The notes: generated by a model from the sequence alone, not told the origin. A stretch of 64,000 nt of DNA from IMGVR_UViG_3300029258_002750:1-64000; one strand, 5' to 3'; positions 7,196-19,016 are shown, counted from the stretch's first letter. Made by a program: numbers and translations.

Positions 7196-7404
7196 ACCAG
7201 CTCCGCCAGCTGATCAACGGCGCTCAGATGCGCCAGGCAGCTCTGCGTGAAGTAGCACGGCGCGCGGCCGTCGTCCCAATTCACGTACACGTCGCTGCCC
7301 ATCATCGTCGCGATGTAGGCAGCTGTCCCCTTCGAGCCGCGCGGGATCTCCGGGTGGATCCCGTTCCTCACCAGCACGACGCGATCGTTCTTCTGAATCC
7401 TCAC
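7192..7404 (-). CDS. small SH3-like hypothetical protein with C-terminal SAVDQLAELV tag
   Basis: GTGA-coupled start; IQKNDRVVLV...GT....YVNWDDG pattern. Confidence 0.6.
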   Translation of the reverse strand: MRIQKNDRVVLVRNGIHPEIPRGSKGTAAYIATMMGSDVYVNWDDGRAPCYFTQSCLAHLSAVDQLAELV

Positions 7405-8352: not shown

Positions 8353-8375
8353 CGAGTCTCGCGGGGGTGTGTGAG

Positions 8376-8530
8376 CCCACGACGTAAGGGGCGGGGGACT
8401 TCATGGTGTTTCCACCTCTGGCGCGTCTACCATTCCGCCACCGACCACTGAGACGGCCGGGCGGGACTCGAACCCGCACGCTCTATCGAGCACCAGCTTG
8501 CAGGATGTAGTCTCCCAAGGCATTCGTGGG
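8376..8530 (-). ncRNA. YrlA-type Y RNA #1 (circularly permuted tRNA mimic)
   Basis: Order on minus strand: CCCACGA-ATG ... T arm GCGGG-TTCGAGT-CCCGC, acceptor stem closed by a loop (CCGGCCG-TCTCAG-TGGTCGG), D arm GCGGAATGGTAGACGC ... ACG-TCGTGGG closing stem; Ro60 gene in same island. Confidence 0.8.
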
Positions 8531-8540
8531 TTGTTCTAGT

Positions 8541-8610
8541 GGACCGACGTTGTGGGGTCAGCGAGACGAAACAGCTCCAAAAGATGTAGTCCCGCCGGAG
8601 CATTCGGTCC
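8541..8610 (-). ncRNA. short Y-like RNA
   Basis: GGACCGA-ATGC...GGACTACATC...ACAACG-TCGGTCC; same terminal module as the permuted tRNA mimics. Confidence 0.6.
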
Positions 8611-8641
8611 TATGACGACCGTGGGGCTTTCACCCACGGCC

Positions 8642-8771
8642 GCCGGATCGGCGACGCGAGAGCTTGCGTTCACGCCGCCGGGTTGCTGCGGCCCCTCTTG
8701 GCCCTGCCGAGTCCAGGTAACCACCAAGGGGCCTGCCATTCACTGATGTACTCCCGTCAAGTTCATCCGGC
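8642..8771 (-). ncRNA. structured RNA, divergent member of the Y-like family (rod with central bubble)
   Basis: GCCGGAT/ATCCGGC closing stem, GACGGGAG/CTCTCGCGTC, GGGAGTACATC motif, apical GGCCCC/GGGGCC stem. Confidence 0.45.
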
Positions 8772-8802
8772 TGCTGGCCGACGTTGTAGACGACGAGAGG
8801 GA

Positions 8803-8876
8803 TAGCGCGGGCAGGATTTGAACCTGCGATCTCCGGGTTATGAGCCCAGCGTCATACCGAACTAGACTACCGCGCG
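8803..8876 (-). tRNA. tRNA-fMet(CAT), canonical elbow
   Basis: C1/T72 mismatch, GGG/CCC anticodon stem, CTCATAA loop, D-loop GG, T-loop TTCAAAT. Confidence 0.9.
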
Positions 8877-8945
8877 TCGTTGTGCAGGGAGAACAGAGTC
8901 CCTTTGTCCTGGTCGAGCCAGGCTTACGCGACCTGCACCGCGATT

Positions 8946-9300
8946 TGGAGCTGGCGAGAATCGAACTCGCGTCCTGTAACCTATCCACCCGCGCGTCTAC
9001 GTGCGTAGCTCGCTCTCCTTAGTCCCCTCGTCTGAGCGCGAGCGTCTCTGGCGAGCGGGCGCCTCTAGGGAGTGTTCTCGTCCTTCACCGGGCGAGGCCC
9101 CGGATCAGGTACCAGCCCATCTTGTGGCCCAGACCTTTCACCCCATGGGCGGGGGATCCAGCTGGGGGCGGCCTTTTAGGCTGCCAGGCGAACAGGTGCG
9201 TTGGCAACTATTCAGTTTCCAGGTTGTTTATAGAGGCCAACCTGGGACCTCTACACGCAACGCGAGCTTCACCGGCCCAGTCGATACCAGTGTCAGCCCC
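8946..9300 (-). ncRNA. ssrA: tmRNA, tag peptide (A)ANAPVRLAA
   Basis: 5' GGGGCTGACACTGGTATCGAC, 3' GCGAG-TTCGATT-CTCGC-CAGCTCC-A, G3:U70; resume GCC at 9205, TAA at 9176-9178. Confidence 0.95.
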
Positions 9301-9315
9301 GTGTGTTCGTGCCCA

Positions 9316-9329
9316 AGTTGTCAAAGAGC
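9316..9329 (-). promoter_or_regulatory. boxA-like antitermination site GCTCTTTGACAACT in tmRNA leader
   Basis: Resembles rrn boxA; near-identical copy at 16687-16701 before the tRNA array. Confidence 0.5.
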
Positions 9330-9420
9330 GGAGGAACGGACCGGACGCTTCTCATAAGGGGGAAAGTGGGGATTCGATAGGCGCTACCCGGTCCGCTTCT
9401 CCTTCTCACTCGCTGTCTTG

Positions 9421-9429
9421 GTTATACCC
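9421..9429 (-). promoter_or_regulatory. promoter -10 motif GGGTATAAC upstream of tmRNA
   Basis: Variant of the recurring GGGTAGAAC motif. Confidence 0.55.
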
Positions 9430-9457
9430 TGCGGCCGACAGCCGCAAGGAAGTTTCA

Positions 9458-9529
9458 TGGGTCCGCAGGGATTCGCACCCTGACCGCCTCGGGTAAAAGC
9501 CGAGCGTGCTCCTGTTACACCACGAACCC
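9458..9529 (-). tRNA. tRNA-Lys(TTT), A18/G55
   Basis: CTCGG-CTTTTAC-CCGAG; T-loop TGCGAAT. Confidence 0.9.
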
Positions 9530-9530
9530 G

Positions 9531-9600
9531 TGGTACCCCCGCCCGGAGTCGCACCGGGGTCGCCGGGTTTAGAAGACCTGGCCGCCTCTCTGCCGGGGGC
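9531..9600 (-). tRNA. tRNA-Arg(TCT), reduced D arm, encoded CCA
   Basis: Loop CTTCTAA; T-loop TGCGACT; GCCCCCG/CGGGGGT-ACCA. Confidence 0.7.
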
Positions 9601-9603
9601 AAA

Positions 9604-9674
9604 AGCGGGCACCGGGAATTGCACCCGGGTCATCGGGATGGAAGCCCGACGCTCTACTTCTAAGCTATGCCCGC
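9604..9674 (-). tRNA. tRNA-Gly(TCC)
   Basis: TCGGG-CTTCCAT-CCCGA; T-loop TGCAATT; U73. Confidence 0.9.
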
Positions 9675-9678
9675 GAGA

Positions 9679-9750
9679 TGACCCCGGTGGGGATCGCACC
9701 CACACCTTCGGCGTGAAAGACCGACATCCAGACTACTAGACCACGGGGCC
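9679..9750 (-). tRNA. tRNA-Glu(TTC)
   Basis: TCGGT-CTTTCAC-GCCGA; T-loop TGCGATC. Confidence 0.9.
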
Positions 9751-9836
9751 AGGTGGCCGAGCGGGAGGGCTCGGCCGGGGGCGACCGGAAGACCGGACGC
9801 ACTCCACCATCACAGACTCGCTCGCGCGAGTTGCGA

Positions 9837-9908
9837 TGGGCACGGTGAGAATCGCACTCACGACCTCTGCTACGTCAAAGCAGCGCTCTTCTACTGAGCT
9901 ACGCGCCC
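9837..9908 (-). tRNA. tRNA-Val(GAC)
   Basis: CTGCT-TTGACGT-AGCAG; T-loop TGCGATT. Confidence 0.9.
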
Positions 9909-9994
9909 CGGCAACCGCCCGGTCCGTCAGGACCGTATTCCACCTTGGACGGATGGTGCATCCCTTCATCTAAACACGGGTCTAAGAGGCGGCA

Positions 9995-10076
9995 CGGAAG
10001 GCGGAGGAGTTGCACCCCATCCCGAAGGACCATCCGGTTTCAAGCCGGTACTCGGCGCTGGCCGAGATCGCCTTCC
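9995..10076 (-). tRNA. tRNA-Ser(TGA)
   Basis: Loop CTTGAAA, long variable arm, G73; T-loop TGCAACT. Confidence 0.85.
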
Positions 10077-10081
10077 AGACA

Positions 10082-10154
10082 TGGAGCCTACGGGACTCGC
10101 ACCCGTGCCCTCCGACCTGCCAGATCGGCGCTCTCCTAACTGAGCTAAGGCCCC
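10082..10154 (-). tRNA. tRNA-Ala(GGC)
   Basis: G3:U70; CCGAT-CTGGCAG-GTCGG; T-loop TGCGAGT. Confidence 0.9.
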
Positions 10155-10158
10155 TCGA

Positions 10159-10230
10159 TGGAGCAGAAGGGAATTGCACCCTCAACCTCGGCGTTGCGAA
10201 CGCCGCGCTCTCCTATTGAGCTACTGCCCC
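10159..10230 (-). tRNA. tRNA-Ala(CGC)
   Basis: G3:U70; CGGCG-TTCGCAA-CGCCG; T-loop TGCAATT. Confidence 0.9.
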
Positions 10231-10709
10231 GTGTGTTCGTGTTCTCCGCAGTCGCCGCAGTCGTGATCGCAGTGGGGACACTTGCCCTCCTCCGAGCACT
10301 CGCCGCAGACCGTGGTGACGGTCGTCATGTCCGGGTACTCCCTGAGCATCTTCTCGGCTAGCTGCCGGATGGGCAGCCCCGGAACACTCGGGTCCGGCTC
10401 GGCAGCCTTGCCGCAGACCGAACACTTCGTGTTCTCCAGGTGTTTGGCGAGCGCGTCGATCTTCGCTGCGTCGATCTTCGCGAAGGCATCGTGCTCGAAC
10501 TGGAGGACAGCGACCTGCCCGGTTGAGTAGTTCTCGGCGACCGGGTAGTCGGTGCCGCCGCGACCACATCGTGCGCAGGCGCGCATCATCATCGGATCGA
10601 GCGGTCGCTCCGGCTTGACCTCGGTCTGCGTGTGCTGCACGACCACGATCATCCGGCCGACGGATGGCGCGTCCTCACAGAACGCGCACCAGACGGGCTC
10701 ATCAACCAC
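10221..10709 (-). CDS. Cys-rich multi Zn-finger-like protein embedded in tRNA array
   Basis: GGAGG SD + GTG; six CxxC pairs; stop TAG is nt 8-10 of tRNA-Ala(CGC). Confidence 0.7.
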   Translation of the reverse strand: MVDEPVWCAFCEDAPSVGRMIVVVQHTQTEVKPERPLDPMMMRACARCGRGGTDYPVAENYSTGQVAVLQFEHDAFAKIDAAKIDALAKHLENTKCSVCGKAAEPDPSVPGLPIRQLAEKMLREYPDMTTVTTVCGECSEEGKCPHCDHDCGDCGEHEHTGQ

Positions 10710-10722
10710 TACGACCTCCGAA

Positions 10723-10778
10723 TCGGGCACCCGGGATTCGCACCCGGAGTCTCTCCTGATGAGATGAGAGAGACAACC
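10723..10778 (-). pseudogene. tRNA remnant (T arm + 3' acceptor strand only)
   Basis: CCGGG-TGCGAAT-CCCGG-GTGCCCG-A with no matching 5' strand or D arm. Confidence 0.5.
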
Positions 10779-10781
10779 CAA

Positions 10782-10852
10782 TCGGGGAACCCGGAGTTGC
10801 ACCGAGATTACACCGTCCCGAACGGCGCGTGTTGCTGTTACACCATTCCCCG
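10782..10852 (-). tRNA. tRNA-Pro(CGG)
   Basis: CGCCG-TTCGGGA-CGGTG; T-loop TGCAACT. Confidence 0.9.
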
Positions 10853-11458
10853 TAGTTCGTCGATGTCCCGAATCTCGTCCACGACCGCAGCCAACCGCGC
10901 CCGCCGCTTCGCGCCGAACACACCGCGCTTGTCGTTCACGAAGGCGATCTTCCGCCTCGGGTCATCTTGAATGTCCTCGAACCTGACGATCATGTCGTCG
11001 ATTCCTCGTCGGGCGTGCGTCGAGTGCTCGATGATCAGATCATCGTCTGCGAAGTCCACAGCGCGCTCCCCGATCCACTCCTTCCGAAAGGTGCGGCCGA
11101 AGAGGCGCTCTAGCTTCCGCTTCACCGGCAACTCGTCCTGCCGATACGCTAGGCCAGCTTGCTTGAGGTTCGCACGAGTCGCGGTGAGACAGCCCTCGCG
11201 GTTGTTCTCCCACGCGGCTCGACCGCCTTGCTTGCCCCACGCACGGCGCTGCGCTTTGGTTCCGGCGATCTGGCCGGATGTTGGCGACGGCCGACGCACC
11301 GTGATCGCTTCTCGCTGCTTGGCCGAGAGCTTGATGTCTCTGACCATGTAGCGAATCGTGCTCTTGCCAAGCTCAAGTTCCTCGGCAATCTCGGTGAGCG
11401 ACGCGCCGTCCCGTCGAAGGCGTCTCGCTCGATCGCGGATCTCTTTCGGGTAAGCCAT
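10838..11458 (-). CDS. HTH + DUF559/Vsr-like putative homing endonuclease
   Basis: N-terminal HTH (GASLTEIAEELELGKSTI); FRKEWIGERAVDF....IIEH nuclease-like core; own GGGTAAGAT-N6-ATG promoter. Confidence 0.6.
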   Translation of the reverse strand: MAYPKEIRDRARRLRRDGASLTEIAEELELGKSTIRYMVRDIKLSAKQREAITVRRPSPTSGQIAGTKAQRRAWGKQGGRAAWENNREGCLTATRANLKQAGLAYRQDELPVKRKLERLFGRTFRKEWIGERAVDFADDDLIIEHSTHARRGIDDMIVRFEDIQDDPRRKIAFVNDKRGVFGAKRRARLAAVVDEIRDIDELRGMV

Positions 11459-11470
11459 ACGAGCATCTTA

Positions 11471-11525
11471 CCCACGCGACCTCTGCGATTACAAGAGCGC
11501 GCTGACTAGACTGCGCTACAGTCCG
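11471..11525 (-). pseudogene. truncated tRNA-Pro-like 5' half
   Basis: CGGACTG-TA-GCGCAGTCTAGTCAGCGC followed by a distorted anticodon arm; T arm replaced by the promoter of the downstream nuclease gene. Confidence 0.55.
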
Positions 11526-11530
11526 TTGAA

Positions 11531-11615
11531 CGGAACGCGGAGGACTTGCACCCCAGACCTTTCGGCCCCAGCCGGGTTCGAGCCGGTGCCCGCGCGCTTG
11601 TCGGGTTCGCGTTCC
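11531..11615 (-). tRNA. tRNA-Ser(CGA)
   Basis: Loop CTCGAAC, long variable arm, G73; T-loop TGCAAGT. Confidence 0.85.
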
Positions 11616-11703
11616 TTGGAGCAGCGCGCCTGGCGTCTCACCAGGAGACGCCGAAGCGCCCAGGGATACCGTTGCCGTACGACCGGCTCCCACGCCTGCA
11701 AGA

Positions 11704-11772
11704 TCCCGCAGGAGAGGCTTGCACTCTCTTGCTCGTCCTTATGAGAGACGGCCCACTCTACGTGTCTGCGGG
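11704..11772 (-). tRNA. tRNA-Met/Ile2(CAT), elongator type, poor D arm
   Basis: CCCGCAG/CTGCGGG-A; CGTCT-CTCATAA-GGACG; T-loop TGCAAGC. Confidence 0.7.
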
Positions 11773-11776
11773 TTGA

Positions 11777-11847
11777 AGCCCTAGCCCGGAGTCGCACCGG
11801 GGTCTCCTCCGTACCAAGGAGGTGTTCTGCTCTTGGACCACTAGGGC
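11777..11847 (-). tRNA. tRNA-Thr(GGT)
   Basis: CCTCC-TTGGTAC-GGAGG; T-loop TGCGACT. Confidence 0.9.
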
Positions 11848-11851
11848 AAGA

Positions 11852-11925
11852 TCAGGGCGGTGGGATTCGCACCCACGGTCTCGTGTCCCCCAGACACGCG
11901 CCTTACTAGACTAGGCCACGCCCTG
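11852..11925 (-). tRNA. tRNA-Pro(GGG)
   Basis: CGTGT-CTGGGGG-ACACG; T-loop TGCGAAT. Confidence 0.9.
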
Positions 11926-11929
11926 TTGA

Positions 11930-12001
11930 TACTCGCGCCGGGAATCGCACCCGGATCTCCTCTTTCGGAGAGAGGTATCCTATCTTTTGGACGACGCGAG
12001 C
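11930..12001 (-). tRNA. tRNA-Arg(CCG)
   Basis: CCTCT-CTCCGAA-AGAGG; T-loop TGCGATT. Confidence 0.9.
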
Positions 12002-12002
12002 T

Positions 12003-12079
12003 TGGTACTCCCGGCAGGATTCGCACCTGCGAAGACCTCTTTAGGAGAGAGGCGCCTTAGTCTGCTCGGCCACGGGAGC
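12003..12079 (-). tRNA. tRNA-Arg(CCT), encoded CCA
   Basis: CCTCT-CTCCTAA-AGAGG; T-loop TGCGAAT. Confidence 0.9.
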
Positions 12080-12082
12080 GCA

Positions 12083-12154
12083 AGCCCCGACTCGGAGTTG
12101 CACCGAGTTCTCCTCCGTACGAAAGAGGCACATCACTCTTTATGCTTTCGGGGC
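12083..12154 (-). tRNA. tRNA-Thr(CGT)
   Basis: CCTCT-TTCGTAC-GGAGG; T-loop TGCAACT. Confidence 0.85.
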
Positions 12155-12246
12155 AGGATCGGGCATGTCCCAAGAGCACCCGGCCCCTAGAAGGCCGGAC
12201 TCATGGGCGTGCATCGCAGCGCCTAGAACGCCGTGAGTCCCGATCA

Positions 12247-12330
12247 CGGAGGAGGGGGGAGTCGCACCCCAACCTGACGGACCACCCGGATTCCAGCCGG
12301 GGCTCGGAGCTACTCCGAGTTCTCTCCTCC
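12247..12330 (-). tRNA. tRNA-Ser(GGA)
   Basis: CCCGG-CTGGAAT-CCGGG, long variable arm, G73; T-loop TGCGACT. Confidence 0.85.
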
Positions 12331-12356
12331 AGCAGAGCTGGGTCAGCGCAGACCTG

Positions 12357-12926
12357 CTACGCGACCCGCTCCTTCGCCAGGAACGGCTCCCAGCTCGCCA
12401 GGACCACACCGCGCGGGACCCGCAGGCCGGGCTTCCAGCTCGGGGCGGCAGGCTTCTTCCTGGGCCGCATCTTGGCTTCCTTCGGCATCTTGTCGGCCTT
12501 GCGCGCGTTGCAGCTCTCGCAGGCCGCGACGCAGTTCTCCCAGGTCGTCGGCCCGCCCTTGGAGCGGGGCGTGACGTGGTCGATCGTGAGCTTCCTCGGG
12601 GGAAGCTCGGCGCCGCAGTACTGGCAGGTGTGCTCATCGCGCCTGTAGAGGTTCGGCCGGTTGAAGCTGACCCTCTGTGGTGGCCGCTCGCCGTACTTCT
12701 TGCAGACGACCACCTCGGGGGCCGGGATCGGCTGGCCCGCCGTCTTGATCATCCGATCGGTGTCGGCGCGCTCGATCCACTCCTCGAGCGTCATCAGGTA
12801 GAAGCTCGTCGGGCACATGATCGAGGCCATGTCCCTCATCACGTTGCAGAGGGCGACCTTGATCGGCAGGAACGTGACCGGCTGCCAGTTCCTATTCAGC
12901 ACCAGGCAAGGTTCGTCGATGATCAC
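12357..12926 (-). CDS. HNH endonuclease (McrA/HNH_5-like)
   Basis: CLVLNRNWQP N-terminus; RDEHTCQYCG...LTIDHVTPRSKGG...WENCVAACESCNARK. Confidence 0.9.
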   Translation of the reverse strand: MIIDEPCLVLNRNWQPVTFLPIKVALCNVMRDMASIMCPTSFYLMTLEEWIERADTDRMIKTAGQPIPAPEVVVCKKYGERPPQRVSFNRPNLYRRDEHTCQYCGAELPPRKLTIDHVTPRSKGGPTTWENCVAACESCNARKADKMPKEAKMRPRKKPAAPSWKPGLRVPRGVVLASWEPFLAKERVA

Positions 12927-12938
12927 GGCTCTCTCCGA

Positions 12939-13012
12939 TCAGGGAGGCGGGAGTCGCACCCGCATGATGTCCTGGTCCCAAACCAGGCGGCTTACTGTTA
13001 GCCCACTCCCTG
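12939..13012 (-). tRNA. tRNA-Pro(TGG)
   Basis: CCTGG-TTTGGGA-CCAGG; T-loop TGCGACT. Confidence 0.9.
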
Positions 13013-13024
13013 GTGGCTGGTTGG

Positions 13025-13129
13025 TGGCACGCAGACGAGGACTCGAACCCCGCAAAGACCATCGGCCTGGGCCGTTTCCTACGATAACCCGGAGCACCCT
13101 TCCCTCCCTCTCCGTTCCGAGCTTCGCGT
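13025..13129 (-). ncRNA. 105-nt aberrant tRNA-like RNA with encoded CCA
   Basis: 3' CGGGG-TTCGAGT-CCTCG-TCTGCGT-G-CCA pairing partly with 5' ACGCGAA; no normal anticodon loop. Confidence 0.5.
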
Positions 13130-13187
13130 AGGACTCCACTCGACACTGAGTTCGCTCGTGGCGCTCTGCCGATCTGCGCACCGATGA

Positions 13188-13270
13188 CGGAAGGCGGGAG
13201 ACTCGCACTCCAACCCGAAGGACGCACGCCTTAGCAGGGCGGCCCGGCTCGCTTGTCCGGTTCACCTTCC
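13188..13270 (-). tRNA. tRNA-Ser(GCT)
   Basis: Loop CTGCTAA, long variable arm, G73; T-loop TGCGAGT. Confidence 0.85.
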
Positions 13271-13825
13271 AGTGGTCTTGGGGTAGCCGAAGCGATCGAA
13301 GTCGTCGCCCCACTTCTCGACTACCATCCGCTCGATCTCCGGCGTGTACTGGCTCTGCCAGTCGGCCGTGATCGGGCTCTGCGGGACGATGTGCAGCCGC
13401 TCGTTGGCGACGAACGGCAGCTCGCTGAAGCTCGCCTGGAGCTGTTCGTAGCGGATCAGCTGGGCGGGCTCGATCTCTCCCAGCCGAGCTGACTGGGACT
13501 CGAAGCCGGACCCTGCGGTCCTCTCAACGAAGGCCCCGAAGTCGTCCGGCCTCGCGCGGACGAACTCGCCCAGCTCGTTGGGCCACCGGGACACCCAGTT
13601 CCAGCAGGAGACCATTCTGCTGAATGGGTTCCTCACGGTCGCGATCACGAGGTAGCTCTCGCACCCGGTCGGGATCCCGATCCGATGCGTGAGCATCCGA
13701 CCGTCCTGCTCGCCGCCGATGCAGCCGAACCTGTCGCGCAGCGTGTGGAACACGCAGCGGGTGCCGGTCCGCATGTTGGCGAGGAAGACGAAACGGTGCG
13801 CGTGCGAGACGTTCATCTCGCGCAT
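13262..13825 (-). CDS. sulfotransferase family 2-like protein
   Basis: FVFLANMRTGT (5'-PSB loop), ATVRNPFSRMVS (3'-PB), IRYEQL, DFDRFGY. Confidence 0.75.
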   Translation of the reverse strand: MREMNVSHAHRFVFLANMRTGTRCVFHTLRDRFGCIGGEQDGRMLTHRIGIPTGCESYLVIATVRNPFSRMVSCWNWVSRWPNELGEFVRARPDDFGAFVERTAGSGFESQSARLGEIEPAQLIRYEQLQASFSELPFVANERLHIVPQSPITADWQSQYTPEIERMVVEKWGDDFDRFGYPKTTGR

Positions 13826-13832
13826 CGTCGCA

Positions 13833-13906
13833 TAGGGCCACTGGGACTTGCACCCAGCGCCTCCGGCATATCAGACCGGCGCTCTACCTGCATGAGCTAT
13901 GACCCT
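13833..13906 (-). tRNA. tRNA-Ile(GAT)
   Basis: CCGGT-CTGATAT-GCCGG; T-loop TGCAAGT. Confidence 0.9.
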
Positions 13907-13910
13907 GTGA

Positions 13911-13983
13911 TGGTCCCGGTCGGATTTGCACCGACAACCTCTTGGCCCTCGACCAAGCGCCTCTGCTGTTGGGCTACGAGACC
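13911..13983 (-). tRNA. tRNA-Leu(GAG), short variable loop
   Basis: CTTGG-TCGAGGG-CCAAG (C33); D arm GCCCAACAGCAGAGGC; T-loop TGCAAAT. Confidence 0.85.
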
Positions 13984-13987
13984 GGAC

Positions 13988-14052
13988 GCTCGACGTTGTT
14001 GGTGCCGCAGACGTGCATGTGTTCAGGATGTAGTCCACGACGGCATTCGAGC
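13988..14052 (-). ncRNA. short Y-like RNA
   Basis: GCTCGA-ATGCC...GGACTACATC...ACAACG-TCGAGC. Confidence 0.6.
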
Positions 14053-14055
14053 TGA

Positions 14056-14128
14056 TGATCCTGGTCGGATTTGCACCGACAACCTCCGCATCCTGAGTGC
14101 GGCGCCTCTGCTGTTGGGCTACAGGATC
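14056..14128 (-). tRNA. tRNA-Leu(CAG), short variable loop
   Basis: CCGCA-CTCAGGA-TGCGG; T-loop TGCAAAT. Confidence 0.9.
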
Positions 14129-14131
14129 GTA

Positions 14132-14203
14132 TGTCCCGGGAGGGATTTGCACCCTCAACTCTGGTGTTTGAGACCAGCGGCGTTGCTATTAGCCTACCGG
14201 GAC
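14132..14203 (-). tRNA. tRNA-Leu(CAA), short variable loop
   Basis: CTGGT-CTCAAAC-ACCAG; T-loop TGCAAAT. Confidence 0.9.
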
Positions 14204-14224
14204 TCTTCCGATGTTCTTTCCGCA

Positions 14225-14301
14225 GAACGTCGGTGTCTGACTGTTGCAGTTGGGGCAGAGGAAGCACCAGACCAGTGCCTCTGCTGTTGGGCTAGCGGAG
14301 C
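14225..14301 (-). pseudogene. degenerate tRNA (Leu-type 5' half)
   Basis: GCTCCGC-TA-GCCCAACAGCAGAGGC intact; anticodon and T arms decayed. Confidence 0.5.
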
Positions 14302-14378
14302 TGGTAGGGCGCCTGGGAATCGCACCCAGCTTGGAAAGGGTTATAAGCACCTCCGCGACACCTAGCCGCCCGCGCCCC
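14302..14378 (-). tRNA. tRNA-Ile(TAT), encoded CCA
   Basis: GGGGCGC/GCGCCCT-ACCA; loop CTTATAA on a bulged stem; T-loop TGCGATT. Confidence 0.75.
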
Positions 14379-14381
14379 TCA

Positions 14382-14455
14382 TGCCCCCGGTGGGAGTTGC
14401 ACCCACAATCTCTCGGTCCGTAGCCGAGCGCCTTAGTCTGTTTGGCCACGGGGGT
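14382..14455 (-). tRNA. tRNA-Arg(ACG)
   Basis: CTCGG-CTACGGA-CCGAG; T-loop TGCAACT. Confidence 0.9.
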
Positions 14456-14459
14456 TGGA

Positions 14460-14531
14460 TACCCGGACTGCGAGTCGCACGCAGAACTCGAGGTCCACAA
14501 CCTCGCGTGATCACTGTTTCACCATCCGAGC
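14460..14531 (-). tRNA. tRNA-His(GTG), no G-1, A73
   Basis: CGAGG-TTGTGGA-CCTCG; T-loop TGCGACT. Confidence 0.85.
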
Positions 14532-14535
14532 TGGA

Positions 14536-14606
14536 AGCGGCCTGCGGGAGTTGCACCCGCGCGAAGAGCTTGGGAAGCTCTCATGCTGCTGCTACATCAA
14601 GGCCGC
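14536..14606 (-). tRNA. tRNA-Gly(CCC)
   Basis: AGAGC-TTCCCAA-GCTCT; T-loop TGCAACT. Confidence 0.9.
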
Positions 14607-14671
14607 GTGCGCCGGATACCCAGGGGGGCTCCCCAGGCCAGCCGGTCCTTGCCGTGCTGCTTGCGATCCGA

Positions 14672-14754
14672 TCCGCCTGCGTGGATTCGCACCACGTTGC
14701 TCCGAAGAGACCCGGGTTACAGCCGGGCACGACCACTAGGTCGACCCCAGACGG
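14672..14754 (-). tRNA. tRNA-Tyr(GTA), long variable arm, C1:G72
   Basis: CCGTCTG/CAGGCGG-A; CCCGG-CTGTAAC-CCGGG; T-loop TGCGAAT. Confidence 0.85.
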
Positions 14755-14758
14755 TTGA

Positions 14759-14829
14759 AGCGGCCTACGAGAATCGCACTCGTGACTACAGCATGGCAAG
14801 CTGTCGCGTTACTACTACGCCAAGGCCGC
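14759..14829 (-). tRNA. tRNA-Gly(GCC)
   Basis: ACAGC-TTGCCAT-GCTGT; T-loop TGCGATT. Confidence 0.9.
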
Positions 14830-14838
14830 GTTGTAAGG

Positions 14839-15017
14839 GGCTCTCGCTGGGAATTGAACCCAGATCCTCCACACCACGATCGCTTCATAGCCGACCGAAG
14901 CCATCCACGGTCGCGCGGTCTGTGCGGCGTGCTTGCCATCCGACGAGCGTCAGAAACCGGGGCTGCTCGGCCCGGCACTGCGGTAGCTCGTGGACGACCC
15001 CATACACCATCGAGAGC
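14839..15017 (-). ncRNA. about 180-nt tRNA-like RNA with large internal domain
   Basis: Perfect 7-bp acceptor GCTCTCG/CGAGAGC and T arm CTGGG-TTCAATT-CCCAG enclosing about 140 nt of hairpins. Confidence 0.55.
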
Positions 15018-15028
15018 ATGTGTTCAGC

Positions 15029-15099
15029 TGGGCCATGAGGGAGTCGCACCCCCGCCTTCTCGGTGTGAACGAGATGCGCTTCTGTTACACCAATGGCCC
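15029..15099 (-). tRNA. tRNA-Val(CAC)
   Basis: TCTCG-TTCACAC-CGAGA; T-loop TGCGACT. Confidence 0.9.
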
Positions 15100-15104
15100 G
15101 GGTT

Positions 15105-15233
15105 CCGACGACGTGAAGGCGACGAGAGGGTTATCTAGCCACCACGGCCCTCTCCACGAAAGCGGAGAGACTGGGAGTCGAACCCAGATCGATCGAGTTA
15201 CAGTCGATGTACTCCCATCAGGGCATTCGTCGG
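15105..15233 (-). ncRNA. YrlA-type Y RNA #2 (circularly permuted tRNA mimic)
   Basis: CCGACGA-ATG...GATGGGAG; hairpin ATCGA-CTGTAAC-TCGAT; T arm CTGGG-TTCGACT-CCCAG; looped acceptor TCTCTCC-GCTTTCGT-GGAGAGG; CTCTCGTC...ACG-TCGTCGG. Confidence 0.8.
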
Positions 15234-15234
15234 A

Positions 15235-15306
15235 TGGAGTAGGTGGGAGTTGCACCCACGACCCTCGGTTTGCAGGACCGACGCTCTCCTACTGAGCTAC
15301 TACCCC
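15235..15306 (-). tRNA. tRNA-Ala(TGC)
   Basis: G3:U70; TCGGT-CCTGCAA-ACCGA; T-loop TGCAACT. Confidence 0.9.
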
Positions 15307-15310
15307 AAGA

Positions 15311-15382
15311 CGGCCCCCGTGGGATTCGCACCCACAACCTCACGGTCCAAAGCCGCGCGCTCTGCTGTTGAGCTAGGGGGCT
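15311..15382 (-). tRNA. tRNA-Gln(TTG)
   Basis: CGCGG-CTTTGGA-CCGTG; G73; T-loop TGCGAAT. Confidence 0.9.
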
Positions 15383-15624
15383 AGGTTCTTCTCGCGCTCG
15401 CGCGCTCGAATGATCGCAAGCTCGACCTTGCGCTCGCGGGCGGTCTTCTTCCCGCGCTTCTTCGCCAGGCACGTGTAGCAGTGCCTCGGCGGTTGGTGGC
15501 CGCTCCGCGCGGCCCGTTCGATGTGCTTCAGCTTGATCGGCCGATCGCACGCCCTGCATCGTCGGCCGCTCTCTTCAGCGAAGTGCGGCCAGTGGTAGTC
15601 CTTCTCTCGCTTGTTGGTGGCGAT
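15373..15624 (-). CDS. small basic CxxC/CxxC protein with apparent ATC start
   Basis: AGGAGG-act-ATC then ATNKREKDYHWPHF..CRAC..CYTC..; 83 aa; absent from ORF track because of its start codon. Confidence 0.55.
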   Translation of the reverse strand: MATNKREKDYHWPHFAEESGRRCRACDRPIKLKHIERAARSGHQPPRHCYTCLAKKRGKKTARERKVELAIIRAREREKNLAP

Positions 15625-15643
15625 AGTCCTCCTGGCTGGCGGA

Positions 15644-15716
15644 TAGCGTCGCCCGGATTCGAATCGGGATCCTCACAGGTTATGAGCCTGGCGAGCTACC
15701 GTTGCTCTACGACGCG
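15644..15716 (-). tRNA. tRNA-fMet-like(CAT) #2, canonical elbow
   Basis: C1/T72 mismatch, GAGC/GCTC D stem with GG, T-loop TTCGAAT. Confidence 0.85.
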
Positions 15717-15717
15717 A

Positions 15718-15791
15718 CGGCCCCCCTGGGATTTGCACCCAGAAACCTCCGGTTCCAGAGACCGGCGCTCTACTGATTGAGCTAGGGGGCT
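15718..15791 (-). tRNA. tRNA-Gln(CTG)
   Basis: CCGGT-CTCTGGA-ACCGG; T-loop TGCAAAT. Confidence 0.9.
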
Positions 15792-15795
15792 AGGC

Positions 15796-15860
15796 GCCCG
15801 ACGTTGGTGGTTGCCGTGTCGAGCACATGTTGGAGATGTAGACACAGCTGGCATTCGGAC
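15796..15860 (-). ncRNA. short Y-like RNA
   Basis: GTCCGA-ATGCC...CTACATC...CCAACG-TCGGGC. Confidence 0.6.
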
Positions 15861-15862
15861 GA

Positions 15863-15934
15863 CAGGCCGCCTGGGAATCGCACCCAGCAGACGGCAGGTT
15901 TTGGAGACCCGCCCGCGTACCTAGCGCGCGACCT
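15863..15934 (-). tRNA. tRNA-Trp(CCA)
   Basis: Loop CTCCAAA, G73; T-loop TGCGATT. Confidence 0.85.
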
Positions 15935-15937
15935 AGA

Positions 15938-16009
15938 AGTGCCGCCCCGGAGTTGCACCGGGCTCTTCGGTGTTGCAGACCGACGGATGAACTGATCTCC
16001 CTGCGGCAC
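15938..16009 (-). tRNA. tRNA-Cys(GCA)
   Basis: TCGGT-CTGCAAC-ACCGA; U73; T-loop TGCAACT. Confidence 0.85.
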
Positions 16010-16010
16010 G

Positions 16011-16085
16011 TGGCTTACCCCCTGGGATTCGCACCCAGAACATCCTGGTTAACAGCCAGGCACTCTACTATTGAGCTAGGGGTAA
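16011..16085 (-). tRNA. tRNA-Asn(GTT), encoded CCA
   Basis: CCTGG-CTGTTAA-CCAGG; T-loop TGCGAAT. Confidence 0.9.
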
Positions 16086-16157
16086 CTCAGCCCCTCGGAT
16101 TTGCACCGAGACCTCCTCCGGTAACAGCGGAGCGCTCTACTACTAAGCTAGGACTGA
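16086..16157 (-). tRNA. tRNA-Asn(GTT) #2
   Basis: CTCCG-CTGTTAC-CGGAG; G73; T-loop TGCAAAT. Confidence 0.85.
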
Positions 16158-16229
16158 TGACCCGGACGGGAATCGCACCCGCACTCTTCGGCGTGAGAGA
16201 CCGACGTGTTTCTGTTACACCACCGGGCC
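16158..16229 (-). tRNA. tRNA-Glu(CTC)
   Basis: TCGGT-CTCTCAC-GCCGA; T-loop TGCGATT. Confidence 0.9.
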
Positions 16230-16232
16230 AGA

Positions 16233-16304
16233 TGGGCCTGCTCGGATTTGCACCGAGAACATCCTGGTTAAGAGCCAGGCGTGATCCTGTTTCACCACAG
16301 ACCC
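16233..16304 (-). tRNA. tRNA-Lys(CTT)
   Basis: CCTGG-CTCTTAA-CCAGG; T-loop TGCAAAT. Confidence 0.9.
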
Positions 16305-16308
16305 AAGC

Positions 16309-16380
16309 GGGGAGATTCGGGAGTTGCACCCTCATTCACCGGCACGTGCTGCCGCTCGTGACGGATACCTGCTCGGTCCC
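16309..16380 (-). pseudogene. degenerate tRNA remnant
   Basis: T-loop TGCAACT and CGGCA/TGCCG hairpin with 5-nt loop; acceptor stem broken. Confidence 0.4.
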
Positions 16381-16385
16381 CAAGA

Positions 16386-16460
16386 CGGCCGCGACGGGAT
16401 TCGCACCCGCGATCTCCACCGTGACAGGGTGGCATGTTGACTTGGCTACACCACGCGACC
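16386..16460 (-). tRNA. tRNA-Asp(GTC)
   Basis: CCACC-CTGTCAC-GGTGG; G73; T-loop TGCGAAT. Confidence 0.9.
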
Positions 16461-16465
16461 AGGTT

Positions 16466-16603
16466 GACGTCCGAGTGAGGGAACCGCGAGTAGGTGCTCT
16501 TCCACTTGAGCTAGTTCGCCCCGAGTGGCGAACCCTGGAGTCGAACCAGGAACATCCCGCTGATGAAGCGAAAGTGCGTGTAGGATTCTCTCGGCCGGAC
16601 GCC
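16466..16603 (-). ncRNA. YrlA-type Y RNA #3 (circularly permuted tRNA mimic)
   Basis: GGCGTCCG/CGGACGTC closing stem; T arm CCTGG-TTCGACT-CCAGG; looped acceptor GTTCGCC-ACTCGG-GGCGAAC; D arm GCTCAAGTGGAAGAGC. Confidence 0.8.
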
Positions 16604-16605
16604 GA

Positions 16606-16677
16606 TGGGACCCCTCGGAATTGCACCGAGACCTTCCGGTTTTCAGCCGGGTGCTCTACTGGTTGAGCTAAGGCCCC
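16606..16677 (-). tRNA. tRNA-Phe(GAA)
   Basis: Loop CTGAAAA; D arm GCTCAACCAGTAGAGC; T-loop TGCAATT. Confidence 0.9.
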
Positions 16678-16686
16678 AAGACAGCG

Positions 16687-16701: not shown

Positions 16702-16811
16702 GTGCGTTGACGCGCCGATCCGACTAGCTAGGTCAGGGGCAACGCCCTCGTCTTGTGCTTCCCTGGACTGAGGAGGCCGCGATTCCTTTCCACGATTCTC
16801 CTTTTGTCCTA

Positions 16812-16879
16812 AGCCCTTGCTCGGAGTCGCACCGAGACTCGCGGAGTACAAGACCGCGATCCGTCTCACGGACAAGGGC
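16812..16879 (-). tRNA. tRNA-Thr(TGT), short D arm
   Basis: GCCCTTG/CAAGGGC-T; loop CTTGTAC; T-loop TGCGACT. Confidence 0.75.
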
Positions 16880-17339: not shown

Positions 17340-19016
17340 TTACGCCTCCGGCTGCTCGAGGCTAATCGCCTCGATCTCTGCGACCCAGGCGTCCACGTCG
17401 TGCGTGTCGCCCCGGGCGAACCGATCGACCGTGCTCCAGATCGCGTCCGAGAACCCGCCGATGTTGAGGATCTCGTCGGGCGCGCTCGGCGCCTGGGTGG
17501 TCGTGTTCGGCGAGATGTCGATGCAGACCATCCGCGCCCCGCCCGCCTTCTTATGGAGCTGGCGGAACTCGGACATGAGCTGGGTCCCTCGCCCGTAGCG
17601 CAGGCTCCCGCGCGAGTCGACCCACGACTCGTTGTCGCTGACGATGACCACGAGCTTGAACTCGTGCGCCCTCTTCAGGCCGTTCAGGTGACGGAGGGCC
17701 AGCGAGAGGTTGGTCCCGCCGCCGCCCATCTGACCCAGCTTGATGGCGTTCGTCATGACCGTGTCGCGGGGGTTGATGAGCCGCGTGCTGTGGACGCTGG
17801 TGTCCACGGGAATCGCGATCGAGCCCTTGTTCCGCCGAAGCACGGTGGCCGCCATGAGACCAGCCACATCCACGCAGCGGACCTTGGTCGTCGAGCCCTT
17901 CCGCACGCCCGTGACCGGGCTGTGCATCGAGCCGCTGACGTCCACGATCACGGCCGTGGGCACACCGAAGCTGGGGACACTCTCGGTCGCGACCTCCATC
18001 GCGTCCTGAAGGGAGTCCCTGACCTCGAAGGGCAGGTCGATGGGCTCCGGCGCGCCGCTCTCCATCGCGTAGCGACGGTAGTACTGCGCGTACCGCTCGT
18101 AGATCGGGTCTGGGTGCTTGCCCGAGTTCAGGTACGCGACGAGCAGCTGGTAGGGGAAGACCCGGGCCTTCGCCAGCTCCTCGCGGTCGGCGATCCGAGC
18201 TGCGACCAGCTCGGCAATGCCGGGCTCGTCGAAGACGCTGTGGCGCGCTGCCGTGTTGAGGTTCTTGATTGTGAACTGGTAGCCGCCGTTGCGGACGATC
18301 TGCGCCCAGTGGTGCGGCTTGAGGGGCAGCGAGGTGAGCTGCCGGAAGTCGACGTCAGGGACCTCGGCCGACTCGCCGCGCTTGAACGCCTCGTAGTGCT
18401 GGACGATGCCGGGGAGCTTCGCCGCGTCGTGCTCGCGACCGAGGATGTAGCCGATGAGGGCCTTCTGCTCCTCGTCGACCGCCTTCGGGTGGGCGAGCCG
18501 GATGACGTCGGCCAGGCTCGGGTTCTTCCCAACCGTCGCGCGGAAGAGCGCGCGGGCCGACCGCTGCCGGATCCACTTGTTGACGAGCCGCTTGAGGCCC
18601 GACCCCATCGACTTCCGGCCGAGGACGCCGGACCGGACCATCTGGACCAGGTTGCGGACCATCTTGCCGTTGTCGATGACGCGGGTGAAGACCAGGTCGC
18701 ACAGGCGCGGGTCGGCCTTCGACAGCATGACCATAAGAGCCGCAGGCATGTCCTTCATCCCGCCCTTCTGGCGCGCGTAGACCGCGCACTTGGCGAGGAA
18801 GACGGGCTCGACCTGGTCGGCCGCCTGGCGAATGCCCTCGAGCTGGTCGACGGGGGAGGTGTAGTAGGTCGGGTTGAACGTGCCGGTGCACGCCAGCTGC
18901 GCGAGCGCGTGCTTCGGCCCAAACTGGTAGGCCGTGCCTCCGGCCTTGTTCGTGGTGTCGGTTGCGGGAACCGAGCGCCCTGCGGACGCACTCTGGAAGA
19001 CGGCCTTGTTCGCCAC
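17340..19016 (-). CDS. Ro60/TROVE-domain RNA-binding protein (Rsr-like)
   Basis: N.AGG.AY...PKHALAQLACTGTF..TYY; SLADVIRLAHPK; ARVFPYQLLVAY; VWA DVSGSM, GGGTNLS, IVSDNESW; LNIGGFSD. Confidence 0.95.
   Translation of the reverse strand: MANKAVFQSASAGRSVPATDTTNKAGGTAYQFGPKHALAQLACTGTFNPTYYTSPVDQLEGIRQAADQVEPVFLAKCAVYARQKGGMKDMPAALMVMLSKADPRLCDLVFTRVIDNGKMVRNLVQMVRSGVLGRKSMGSGLKRLVNKWIRQRSARALFRATVGKNPSLADVIRLAHPKAVDEEQKALIGYILGREHDAAKLPGIVQHYEAFKRGESAEVPDVDFRQLTSLPLKPHHWAQIVRNGGYQFTIKNLNTAARHSVFDEPGIAELVAARIADREELAKARVFPYQLLVAYLNSGKHPDPIYERYAQYYRRYAMESGAPEPIDLPFEVRDSLQDAMEVATESVPSFGVPTAVIVDVSGSMHSPVTGVRKGSTTKVRCVDVAGLMAATVLRRNKGSIAIPVDTSVHSTRLINPRDTVMTNAIKLGQMGGGGTNLSLALRHLNGLKRAHEFKLVVIVSDNESWVDSRGSLRYGRGTQLMSEFRQLHKKAGGARMVCIDISPNTTTQAPSAPDEILNIGGFSDAIWSTVDRFARGDTHDVDAWVAEIEAISLEQPEA

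What the first reader, a model, noticed from the sequence alone, without database searches (positions are those of the whole stretch)
8376..16603. Three circularly permuted tRNA mimics (YrlA-type Y RNAs) hidden among the tRNAs, next to Ro60
Seen: at 8376-8530, 15105-15233 and 16466-16603 the tRNA parts occur in permuted order (T arm, then an acceptor stem closed by a 6-8 nt loop, then D arm), inside a long terminal stem. Established: bacterial YrlA Y RNAs have this permuted tRNA-like module, bind Ro60/Rsr through the terminal stem, and are found in some phages. The Ro60 gene is at 17340-19016 on the same strand. Unusual here: three distinct paralogs with different bodies (Leu-like variable hairpin; a Tyr-like GUA hairpin; a class-I-like body), interleaved with real tRNAs. 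All keep the canonical G18/U55 elbow that the real tRNAs abandoned. Inference: they may be decoys or baits that present a host-like elbow on a Ro60 scaffold.
Basis: partly seen in the sequence, partly recalled or inferred. Interest (0 to 1): 0.85.

Follow-up and report, generated by a model that had tools for sequence, protein, structure and literature searches.

The report
Phage Y RNAs scattered through tRNA array
A large uncultured phage carries a Ro60 gene followed by at least six Y RNAs tucked between its tRNA genes, three of them with a circularly permuted tRNA-like module: this is a known kind of RNA (YrlA-type), present here in unusually many copies.

Summary
The observation largely holds. 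On the minus strand, 8376-8530, 15105-15233 and 16466-16603 each have a covarying terminal stem enclosing T arm, closed 7-bp acceptor-like hairpin and D region. The D arm is intact in two; in 15105-15233 it is a remnant. ORF 17340-19016 (same strand) is a Ro60 (TROVE + Ro60-vWA domains).

The YrlA reading is supported. The stem, CGAAUGC internal loop, second helix and CUAC box match the Rfam YrlA consensus. Relatives' orthologues hit RF02553 end to end (best 48 bits, E 9e-10). My covariance models find the same parts on the Ro60 strand in related and distant phages, including Myxococcus phage Mx1, with strong compensatory change. No window copy reaches Rfam's gathering score (29.4, 19.4, none; cut-off 69).

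All six abut tRNAs, mostly within 1-4 nt.

The elbow remark is mostly right: 33 of 37 tRNAs have G55 and usually no GG in the D loop, while the Y RNAs keep UUCGA. The decoy idea is untested.

Verdict: new members of a known family. Interest is moderate, mainly for the copy number and the elbow contrast.

The parts
17340..19016 (-). Ro60/Rsr orthologue (558 aa), upstream of the RNA array on the same strand
   Evidence: Pfam TROVE (E 4e-9) and vWA_Ro60 (E 7e-9). There are thousands of Ro60 homologues, the best bacterial ones about 50-54% identical. It is 43% identical to the TROVE protein of Myxococcus phage Mx1.
16466..16603 (-). YrlA-type Y RNA w3, the most classical copy. Parts: P1 16596-16603/16466-16473, P2 16584-16592/16477-16485, CUAC box 16578-16583, V hairpin 16556-16572, T arm 16534-16550, closed acceptor-like hairpin 16514-16533, D arm 16496-16511.
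   Evidence: The MFE structure equals the centroid, z -2.5. Rfam YrlA scores 29.4 bits over model positions 24-84, E 7.7e-5 when searched alone. Model R2 scores 67 bits. It sits 2 nt after tRNA-Phe and 4 nt before tRNA-Asp.
15105..15233 (-). YrlA-type Y RNA w2 with a decayed D arm. Parts: P1 15227-15233/15105-15111, CGAAUG 15224-15229, P2 15212-15219/15121-15128, anticodon-loop-like hairpin 15192-15208 (loop CUGUAAC), T arm 15171-15187, closed hairpin 15149-15170, D remnant 15130-15145.
   Evidence: Mean column identity is 81% with L006 1073-1201 and L007 6951-7078. Those orthologues hit Rfam YrlA over positions 1-114. w2 itself gets no YrlA hit and only 19 bits with R2. It carries an exact GNCGAANG motif (GACGAAUG).
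8376..8530 (-). YrlA-type Y RNA w1 with a class II (Leu-like) body, the last RNA of the array. Parts: P1 8524-8530/8376-8382, CGAAUG 8521-8526, P2 8510-8516/8393-8399, CUACAUC 8504-8510, variable-arm hairpin 8480-8491, T arm 8461-8477, closed hairpin 8441-8460, D arm 8423-8438, extra hairpin 8405-8416.
   Evidence: Fold. Rfam YrlA scores 19.4 bits over model positions 30-81. R2 scores 65.5 bits. The D arm is 19/22 identical to the class II tRNA-Leu of L002.
8541..8610 (-). Short Y RNA a: the YrlA scaffold without a tRNA module (P1, CGAAUGC loop, P2, UACAUC apical loop, ACGUCG)
   Evidence: Motif hit, fold, alignment A2 and covariation, R1 66 bits.
13988..14052 (-). Short Y RNA b, between tRNA-Leu(CAG) and tRNA-Leu(GAG)
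   Evidence: A syntenic orthologue sits at L002 15125-15188.
15795..15861 (-). Short Y RNA c, between tRNA-Trp and tRNA-Gln(CUG)
   Evidence: A syntenic orthologue sits at L002 13126-13189.
8640..8771 (-). Possible seventh, divergent scaffold (GCCGGAUGAAC...GGGAGUACAUC...UCCGGC) with a non-tRNA insert. Uncertain.
   Evidence: Regex hit. The MFE of 8611-8802 prefers other pairings and R1 does not find it.

Best explanation
These are Y RNAs of the bacterial YrlA family, made by a jumbo phage (275-kb contig) that also encodes the Ro60 ring protein.

Each RNA has a common scaffold: a 6-8 bp terminal helix, an internal loop carrying CGAAUGC on the 5' side and ACGU on the 3' side, a second helix, and a CUAC(AUC) box. 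By analogy with characterised Y RNAs, this scaffold is the Ro60-binding module.

The apical part is variable. In three RNAs it is a circularly permuted tRNA-like domain, in which the acceptor stem is closed by a loop and the anticodon stem is opened into the scaffold. In three others it is just a small loop (YrlB-like).

The genes are packed into the phage tRNA array, mostly 1-4 nt from flanking tRNAs. I infer that they are transcribed with the tRNAs and released by the tRNA end-processing enzymes (RNase P for the 3' side, RNase Z or exonucleases for the 5' side).

I infer that phage Ro60 binds each scaffold. The tRNA-like heads, which keep a host-type G18G19/U55 elbow, would then recruit a tRNA-elbow-binding or RNA-decay partner, with host PNPase as the best precedent. 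The short forms would act as gates or alternative tethers.

Shown here: sequence, structure, covariation, homology and linkage to Ro60. Inferred: expression, processing, Ro60 binding and partner recruitment.
For: - The scaffold equals the Rfam YrlA consensus (acggCgaAUGC..uuggGgaaCUAc ... uGucGccg).
- The defining features from PMC4201824 are present: the GNCGAAN0-1G motif, YUAY, and the T/AS/D order.
- Rfam YrlA hits: w3 29.4 bits, E 7.7e-5; L006 749-886 48.2 bits, E 9e-10; the w2 orthologues and L007 6592-6782 are matched end to end.
- Short-scaffold alignment of 12 sequences: 96.9% of cells paired, 9 of 14 pairs with double changes, 0/500 shuffles reach this, and slid controls collapse.
- T-AS-D alignment of 12 sequences: 97.2% paired, and all 6 closed-acceptor pairs covary.
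- All 25 R1 hits in 326 kb of Ro60 loci lie on the Ro60 strand.
- In L008 and L009, which have no tRNAs, the hits sit directly after Ro60.
- Among 80 motif-picked control loci, the only one with both R1 and R2 hits also carries a Ro60 gene immediately upstream.
- Cultured Myxococcus phage Mx1 has the same scaffold and core in its tRNA array.
- Phage Ro60 binding phage Y-like RNAs and host PNPase has been shown for Thermus phage phiLo (PMC12135203).
Against: - No window copy reaches Rfam's gathering score of 69 bits, and w2 gets no YrlA hit at all.
- w1 is 8.8 kb from Ro60.
- The leading G of GNCGAAN0-1G is absent from w1, and w3 has CGAG instead of CGAA.
- MFE z-scores of the single sequences are modest (-1.2 to -2.5).
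- The close relative L002 (Ro60 85% identical) lacks w2 and w3 at the syntenic sites, so these copies are dispensable or recently gained.
- There are no expression, end-mapping or binding data. The covariation alignment A6 was fitted to the model.
Confidence: 0.8

Rival explanations
1. They are structured spacers of the tRNA operon. On this view the tRNA-like and hairpin elements exist only to guide RNase P/Z processing or to stabilise the polycistronic precursor, with no Ro60 partnership.
For: All six abut tRNAs, mostly within 1-4 nt, and lie inside the array. No sigma-70 promoters or terminators lie within the array. w1 is 8.8 kb from Ro60. L002 lacks two of them without any visible change to the array.
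Against: The same scaffold occurs directly next to Ro60 in loci with no tRNAs (L008, L009, L102). It matches the curated YrlA consensus. The invariant single-stranded CGAAUGC, UACAUC and ACGUCG blocks point to a specific binding partner rather than a mere spacer.
Confidence: 0.08
2. They are permuted or split tRNA genes whose pieces are cut and joined, or held together after RNase P cleavage in the closed acceptor loop. The result would be chargeable tRNA-like molecules.
For: All three have 7-bp acceptor-like stems. That length is what makes M. smegmatis YrlA an RNase P substrate followed by CCA addition (PMC4201824). In all three the loop begins N-C (UC, GC, AC), which could be extended to NCCA. 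w2 has an anticodon-loop-like hairpin (CUGUAAC), and the tRNA model finds a D-armless cloverleaf at 15163-15215 (20.9 bits).
Against: In w1 and w3 the anticodon stem opens into the Y scaffold and there is no anticodon loop. The w2 hairpin sits at the variable-arm position. There is no bulge-helix-bulge junction. Orthologues in L006 and L007 close the acceptor stem with tetraloops (GAAA, GCGA), which leave no room for processing. The short paralogues share the scaffold with no tRNA parts at all.
Confidence: 0.05
3. The scaffold is an unrecognised self-cleaving ribozyme or other catalytic motif that trims tRNA ends, as HDV-like ribozymes do in some phage tRNA arrays (my recollection of that literature, not checked here).
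For: The unpaired nucleotides are highly conserved and the elements sit immediately 3' of tRNAs. There is a weak twister-sister hit at 8585-8664 (19.6 bits, E 2.4).
Against: The hit is far below threshold and only partly overlaps element a. Covariation shows the 5' end pairing with the 3' end, which is not the HDV-like topology. The scaffold aligns to YrlA.
Confidence: 0.03

Closest known systems
YrlA (Rfam RF02553) of Salmonella Typhimurium, Mycobacterium smegmatis and about 250 other bacteria
   Same: The scaffold matches: terminal helix, CGAAUGC, second helix, CUAC. So does the permuted T / closed acceptor / D order. The T and D loops are canonical and the genes are on the same strand as Ro60. 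w3 even keeps the conserved UAGCUCA...GAGC D arm. The 7-bp acceptor-like stem matches the M. smegmatis form.
   Different: All copies score below the Rfam cut-off. The inserts before the T arm are long and diverse. The bodies are class II (Leu-like) in w1 and D-arm-less in w2. There are three copies per genome, embedded in a tRNA array up to 8.8 kb from Ro60. No rtcBA repair genes lie nearby.
YrlB / Yrn2-type short Y RNAs (S. Typhimurium, M. smegmatis, D. radiodurans; PMC4201824)
   Same: Elements a, b and c are about 65-70 nt hairpins with the CGAA motif and no full tRNA module. They coexist with a YrlA-type RNA.
   Different: Here the short forms share the whole YrlA scaffold sequence, including the CUACAUC box. 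They are present in three copies and each lies between two tRNAs.
Phage Y RNAs: mycobacteriophage YrlA (e.g. ET08; 22 phages in PMC4201824) and Yrl1/Yrl2 of Thermus phage phiLo (PMC12135203)
   Same: In both cases a phage-encoded Ro60 comes with phage-encoded Y RNAs on the same strand. phiLo Ro60 binds its Yrls and forms complexes with host PNPase.
   Different: The Ro60 here is only about 22-25% identical to actinophage Ro60s. Those phages have one or two Y RNAs next to Ro60, whereas this one has six or more spread through the tRNA array.
Myxococcus phage Mx1 (OR576727.2), the closest cultured relative of the Ro60 (43% identity)
   Same: Mx1 has an unannotated YrlA-type RNA with the same scaffold (GCCGAAUGC...GUGACUACAUU...GUCACUGC...UCGGC) and a T-AS-D core scoring 45 bits. 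It lies in the Mx1 tRNA array at about 45171-45292, 11.7 kb from its Ro60.
   Different: No short-type hits were found within 12 kb either side of the Mx1 Ro60. The Mx1 tRNA visible in the stretch I read has a canonical UUCGA T loop.
Permuted tRNA genes (Cyanidioschyzon merolae type) and two-piece tmRNA
   Same: The order of tRNA parts in the gene is circularly permuted.
   Different: Those are processed back into working tRNA or tmRNA. Here the anticodon arm is replaced by a protein-binding scaffold and the acceptor end is closed.

Membership tests
YrlA-type Y RNA (PMC4201824; Rfam RF02553) | GNCGAAN0-1G motif near the 5' end (proposed Ro60 contact) | tested here: met
   w2 has GACGAAUG (exact). 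w1 has CACGAAUG (leading G replaced, and that position is inside the covarying helix). w3 has GCCGAGAG (one change). Short a, b and c all have CGAAUG.
YrlA-type Y RNA (PMC4201824; Rfam RF02553) | Conserved T stem-loop, then a stem-loop in the acceptor position, then a conserved D stem-loop, in that order | tested here: met
   w1 and w3 meet this fully (R2 65-67 bits; Rfam local alignments). Covariation was seen in all three helices across 12 family members. w2 meets it only partly: T arm and closed hairpin are present, the D arm is a remnant.
YrlA-type Y RNA (PMC4201824; Rfam RF02553) | YUAY box at the start of the V region, after the second helix | tested here: met
   CUAC in w1, w3 and short a-c; GUAC in w2. 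UACAUC is invariant in alignment A2 and aligns to CUAc of the Rfam consensus.
YrlA-type Y RNA (PMC4201824; Rfam RF02553) | Encoded within about 4 kb of a Ro60 orthologue on the same strand (survey criterion) | tested here: met
   w3 is 0.74 kb and w2 is 2.1 kb downstream of Ro60 on the same strand. w1 and short a are on the same strand but about 8.8 kb away, outside the criterion.
YrlA-type Y RNA (PMC4201824; Rfam RF02553) | Score at or above the Rfam gathering threshold (69 bits). This is an operational criterion, not a biological one. | tested here: not met
   w3 scores 29.4 bits and w1 19.4 bits, both as local core matches only. w2 has no hit. Relatives reach 24-48 bits end to end. Long insertions before the T arm are the likely cause.
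YrlA-type Y RNA (PMC4201824; Rfam RF02553) | Bound by Ro60/Rsr in vivo; modified by TruB and DusA | not testable with these tools
   This needs co-immunoprecipitation, EMSA and modification mapping.
Short Y RNA (YrlB/Yrn2-like) | Long hairpin carrying the Ro60-binding motif, without a full tRNA module, coexisting with YrlA near Ro60 | tested here: met
   Elements a, b and c: two covarying helices with CGAAUGC. R1 hits lie on the Ro60 strand in 10 Ro60 loci besides the window.
Permuted tRNA gene giving a functional tRNA | Complete cloverleaf, including an anticodon arm at the correct position, once the halves are rejoined | tested here: not met
   In w1 and w3 the anticodon stem continues into the Y scaffold and has no loop. 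ARAGORN and the Rfam tRNA model call no tRNA there. The w2 hairpin is at the variable-arm position.

The most novel reading that the evidence does not exclude
This phage clade has rewritten the elbow of nearly all its own tRNAs: U55 to G, with G18 replaced (probably A18). Its Ro60-bound tRNA mimics keep the host-type G18G19/U55 elbow. That contrast would reflect an elbow-directed conflict. The Y RNPs would either soak up a host or phage factor that recognises canonical elbows, or use that factor to direct Ro60/exonuclease complexes against host tRNAs while the phage's own tRNAs escape.
Probability: 0.1. Interest if true: 0.85.

Novelty: new member of a known kind. Interest (0 to 1): 0.42.

Why it matters
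The partner that recognises the YrlA tRNA-like elbow is still unknown (bioRxiv 10.1101/312249). A phage that carries several YrlA paralogues with different bodies, scaffold-only versions and its own Ro60 offers a natural panel for asking which parts matter.

The split between canonical-elbow mimics and G55 tRNAs in one genome, conserved across at least three related phages, gives a sharp testable handle: whatever binds the mimic should not bind the phage tRNAs. The finding also shows that current annotation (Rfam cut-off, GenBank Mx1 record) misses these RNAs.

Tried and rejected
- Rfam at gathering threshold found no Y RNA.
- Megablast of the whole region and blastn of a tRNA block against GenBank phages found nothing useful.
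- A motif-only scan of IMG/VR (CGAATGC-N-CTACATC) returned mostly chance hits. I reused it as a control set.
- I tried to fetch the relative's equivalent of w1 through the neighbouring protein 7789-8352, but only the window's own contig came back.
- A loose regex for the scaffold was too noisy.
- Region 8611-8802 read as a seventh Y RNA is not supported by folding or by R1, so I list it only as possible.
- The model R2 also hits tRNA-tRNA junctions (T arm of one, D arm of the next) at up to about 35 bits. I therefore treated only hits of 38 bits or more as real.
- A ribozyme reading was rejected (see rival explanations).
- Pfam on 29 ORFs of the window found no PNPase, RtcB or other RNA-repair gene near the locus.
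- Two review papers on bacterial Y RNAs were not held in the library.

Full report
**Setting.** The window is part of IMG/VR contig UViG_3300029258_002750, 275 kb. It has no close relative in GenBank phages. Between about 6.5 and 16.9 kb, everything is on the minus strand: 37 tRNAs found by ARAGORN/Infernal, several more class II tRNAs that ARAGORN missed, a tmRNA (8943-9300) and a few HNH-type ORFs. Immediately upstream on the same strand, ORF 17340-19016 encodes a 558-aa protein with the TROVE and Ro60-vWA Pfam domains. It has thousands of Ro60 homologues.

**Checking the observation.** Read on the minus strand, the three intervals begin and end exactly at complementary 7-8 nt stretches.
- w1 (8376-8530) and w3 (16466-16603) each contain a canonical T arm (loop UUCGAGU or UUCGACU). 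This is followed at once by a 7-bp hairpin with a 6-nt loop, two nucleotides, and a D arm whose loop contains GG.
- w2 (15105-15233) has the T arm and the hairpin. What follows is about 9 nt shorter than in its orthologues and cannot form a D arm.
- My T-AS-D covariance model gives 65-67 bits for w1 and w3 but 19 bits for w2. That is no better than the tRNA-tRNA junctions the model also picks up.

So the permuted tRNA order is real in two copies and partial in the third.

**What the scaffold is.** A motif I noticed while reading, GAATGC-N-TACATC, occurs five times on the minus strand against 0.02 expected. Two copies are the 5' parts of w1 and w2. The other three belong to 65-70 nt hairpins at 8541-8610, 13988-14052 and 15795-15861.
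- Together with nine similar elements from related phages, they align with invariant CG(A/G)AUGC, UACAUC and ACGUCG blocks.
- RNAalifold independently predicts two helices.
- 96.9% of cells pair and 9 of 14 pairs show double changes. No shuffle reaches this, and sliding the partner columns collapses pairing to 29-46%.
- The Rfam YrlA consensus reads acggCgaAUGC..uuggGgaaCUAc at its 5' end and uGucGccg at its 3' end. This scaffold is therefore the YrlA stem.
- It contains the GNCGAAN0-1G and YUAY features that Chen et al. proposed as the Ro60 contact and the start of the V region (PMC4201824).

**Relatives.** Ro60 homologues led to contigs with 85%, 61%, 57% and 56% identical Ro60 (L002-L007) and to more distant viral contigs (L008-L017).
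- Rfam matches YrlA end to end at L006 749-886 (48.2 bits, E 9e-10) and L007 6592-6782. It also matches, weakly, L006 1072-1205 and L007 6950-7082. The last two are the orthologues of w2, at 81% column identity, and have an intact D arm.
- The short-scaffold model R1 finds 25 hits in 326 kb of Ro60 loci, all on the Ro60 strand.
- The core model R2 finds 12 hits of 38 bits or more. Among them are copies just upstream of very distant Ro60 genes (L015-L017, 23-26% identity) and just downstream of Ro60 in L009.
- In that set 97.2% of cells pair, and all six pairs of the closed acceptor helix covary. The caveat is that this alignment was fitted to the model.
- L008 and L009 have no tRNAs, yet carry these RNAs right after Ro60. 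The link is therefore to Ro60, not to tRNAs.
- Among 80 loci picked blindly by the bare motif, only L102 had both R1 and R2 hits. It also carries a Ro60 gene directly upstream on the same strand.
- The closest cultured phage by Ro60, Myxococcus phage Mx1 (43%), has an unannotated RNA with the same scaffold and core in its tRNA array, 11.7 kb from its Ro60.

**The three bodies.**
- w3 is the classical form, and its D arm UAGCUCAAGUGGAAGAGC follows the YrlA consensus.
- w1 is built on a class II body. Its D-arm region is 19/22 identical to the class II tRNA-Leu(GAG) of L002, differing only in the D loop (UGGU against CAGC). It has a GCUC-GAUA-GAGC hairpin at the variable-arm position and CCAG/CUGG as the anticodon-stem equivalent, plus an extra GGUG-GAAA-CACC hairpin.
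- w2 and its orthologues carry a 4-5 bp hairpin with a 7-nt anticodon-like loop (CUGUAAC, CUAUUAA, CUGUUAA) before the T arm.
- In w2 alone, the 5' strand of the second helix can also pair with the strand after the T arm. This gives a D-armless cloverleaf that the tRNA model scores at 20.9 bits. The orthologues cannot form that pairing, so I regard it as secondary.

**Turnover.** L002 and L004 (Ro60 85% identical) keep short b and c at the same inter-tRNA positions. They have no room for w2 or w3: their tRNA-Phe and tRNA-Asp are adjacent, as are tRNA-Ala and the next tRNA. The tRNA-like paralogues are thus gained or lost quickly.

**Biogenesis and function (inferred).** Spacers to flanking tRNAs are mostly 1-4 nt, and a consensus scan finds no promoters or terminators inside the array. 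Release by tRNA-processing enzymes from a long precursor is the simplest model.
- All three tRNA-like copies have the 7-bp acceptor-like stem that makes M. smegmatis YrlA an RNase P substrate with later CCA addition (PMC4201824). Their loops begin N-C. Cleavage is possible but unproven, and the orthologues have tetraloops there.
- Known Y RNAs tether Ro60 to PNPase or gate its cavity. Thermus phage phiLo Ro60 binds its two Y-like RNAs and host PNPase (PMC12135203).
- The YrlA crystal-structure study predicts an elbow-recognising partner (bioRxiv 10.1101/312249).
- A decoy role against an anticodon nuclease has been suggested for Salmonella YrlA (PMC7790460).
- Nothing in the window (29 ORFs scanned) encodes PNPase or RNA-repair enzymes.

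**The elbow contrast.** 33 of 37 tRNAs have T loop UGCRA, that is G55, and 25 of the 32 counted by script have no GG in the D loop. The few U55 tRNAs all keep GG. About 80-88% of tRNAs in L002, L006 and L007 share this pattern, while those of L012 and L013 do not. The Y RNA cores have UUCRA in the window and in the twelve family members aligned. I found no paper describing such tRNAs. Its meaning is open.

**Verdict.** These are genuine structured RNA genes of the YrlA/Y RNA family, with six or seven per genome rather than three. Phage YrlA, several Y RNAs per genome and tRNA-adjacent Y RNAs are all published, so they are new members of a known kind. The copy number, the diversity of heads and the elbow contrast give moderate interest.

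Noticed in passing
window 6525-16678 (-), all tRNAs; also L002, L006, L007: 33 of 37 tRNAs have T loop U54-G55-C56 (UGCRA) instead of UUCRA, and most lack GG in the D loop (the pattern reads A18-G19). Only Leu(UAA) 6525-6598, Met 8803-8876, Met 15641-15717 and Tyr 28222-28298 are canonical. This is clade-specific: about 80-88% in L002/L006/L007 and absent in L013. I found no literature on it.
   Followed up: partly
window 13911-13983, 14056-14128, 14132-14203, 6525-6598 (-): All four tRNAs with Leu anticodons are 72-74 nt and have no long variable arm. The relative L002 has 83-nt class II tRNA-Leu at the syntenic positions for CAA and GAG.
   Followed up: no
window 13013-13180 (-): A tRNA-like element with a canonical T arm (GGGGUUCGAGUCCUC), a 7-bp acceptor pairing and an encoded CCA, but with about 90 nt of extra sequence in the middle. 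No tool calls it a tRNA, and the fold z-score is not significant.
   Followed up: partly
window ~10000-10075, 11530-11615, 12250-12335, 13190-13270, 14300-14380, 15863-15935, 16800-16870 (-): Further tRNA-like genes missed by ARAGORN and mostly by Infernal. They include class II Ser-like tRNAs, a Trp(CCA) and a possible Thr(UGU) just after Ro60. The tRNA complement is therefore larger than the 37 called.
   Followed up: no
L152 257-378 (OR576727.2 about 45171-45292): Cultured Myxococcus phage Mx1 has an unannotated YrlA-type Y RNA in its tRNA array, 11.7 kb upstream of its TROVE gene. It is a usable experimental proxy.
   Followed up: partly
L007 6592-6782: A YrlA-type RNA whose closed acceptor loop carries an insertion of about 55 nt. 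Its L006 orthologue (749-886) has an 8-nt loop there.
   Followed up: no
L006 6062-6215 and L007 12425-12513: A scaffold-like 5' motif (CGGAUGC...GAGUACAUC) is followed by an odd, non-permuted tRNA-like element with a very short anticodon arm (Rfam tRNA-Sec 39.6 bits, below cut-off).
   Followed up: no
window 12357-12926 (-), 10838-11458 (-): An HNH endonuclease and an HTH protein ORF are interspersed within the tRNA array. The same is seen in relatives (HNH_3, DUF559).
   Followed up: no
window 40799-43639 (+): A family A DNA polymerase whose ORF shows an intein splicing-domain match (below the Pfam cut-off) between the exonuclease and polymerase parts.
   Followed up: no
window 9085-9550 (-): ARAGORN also reports a permuted tmRNA overlapping the standard tmRNA and tRNA-Lys. 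Rfam gives it only 24.8 bits (cut-off 47), so it is probably an artefact of the adjacent tRNA-Lys.
   Followed up: no
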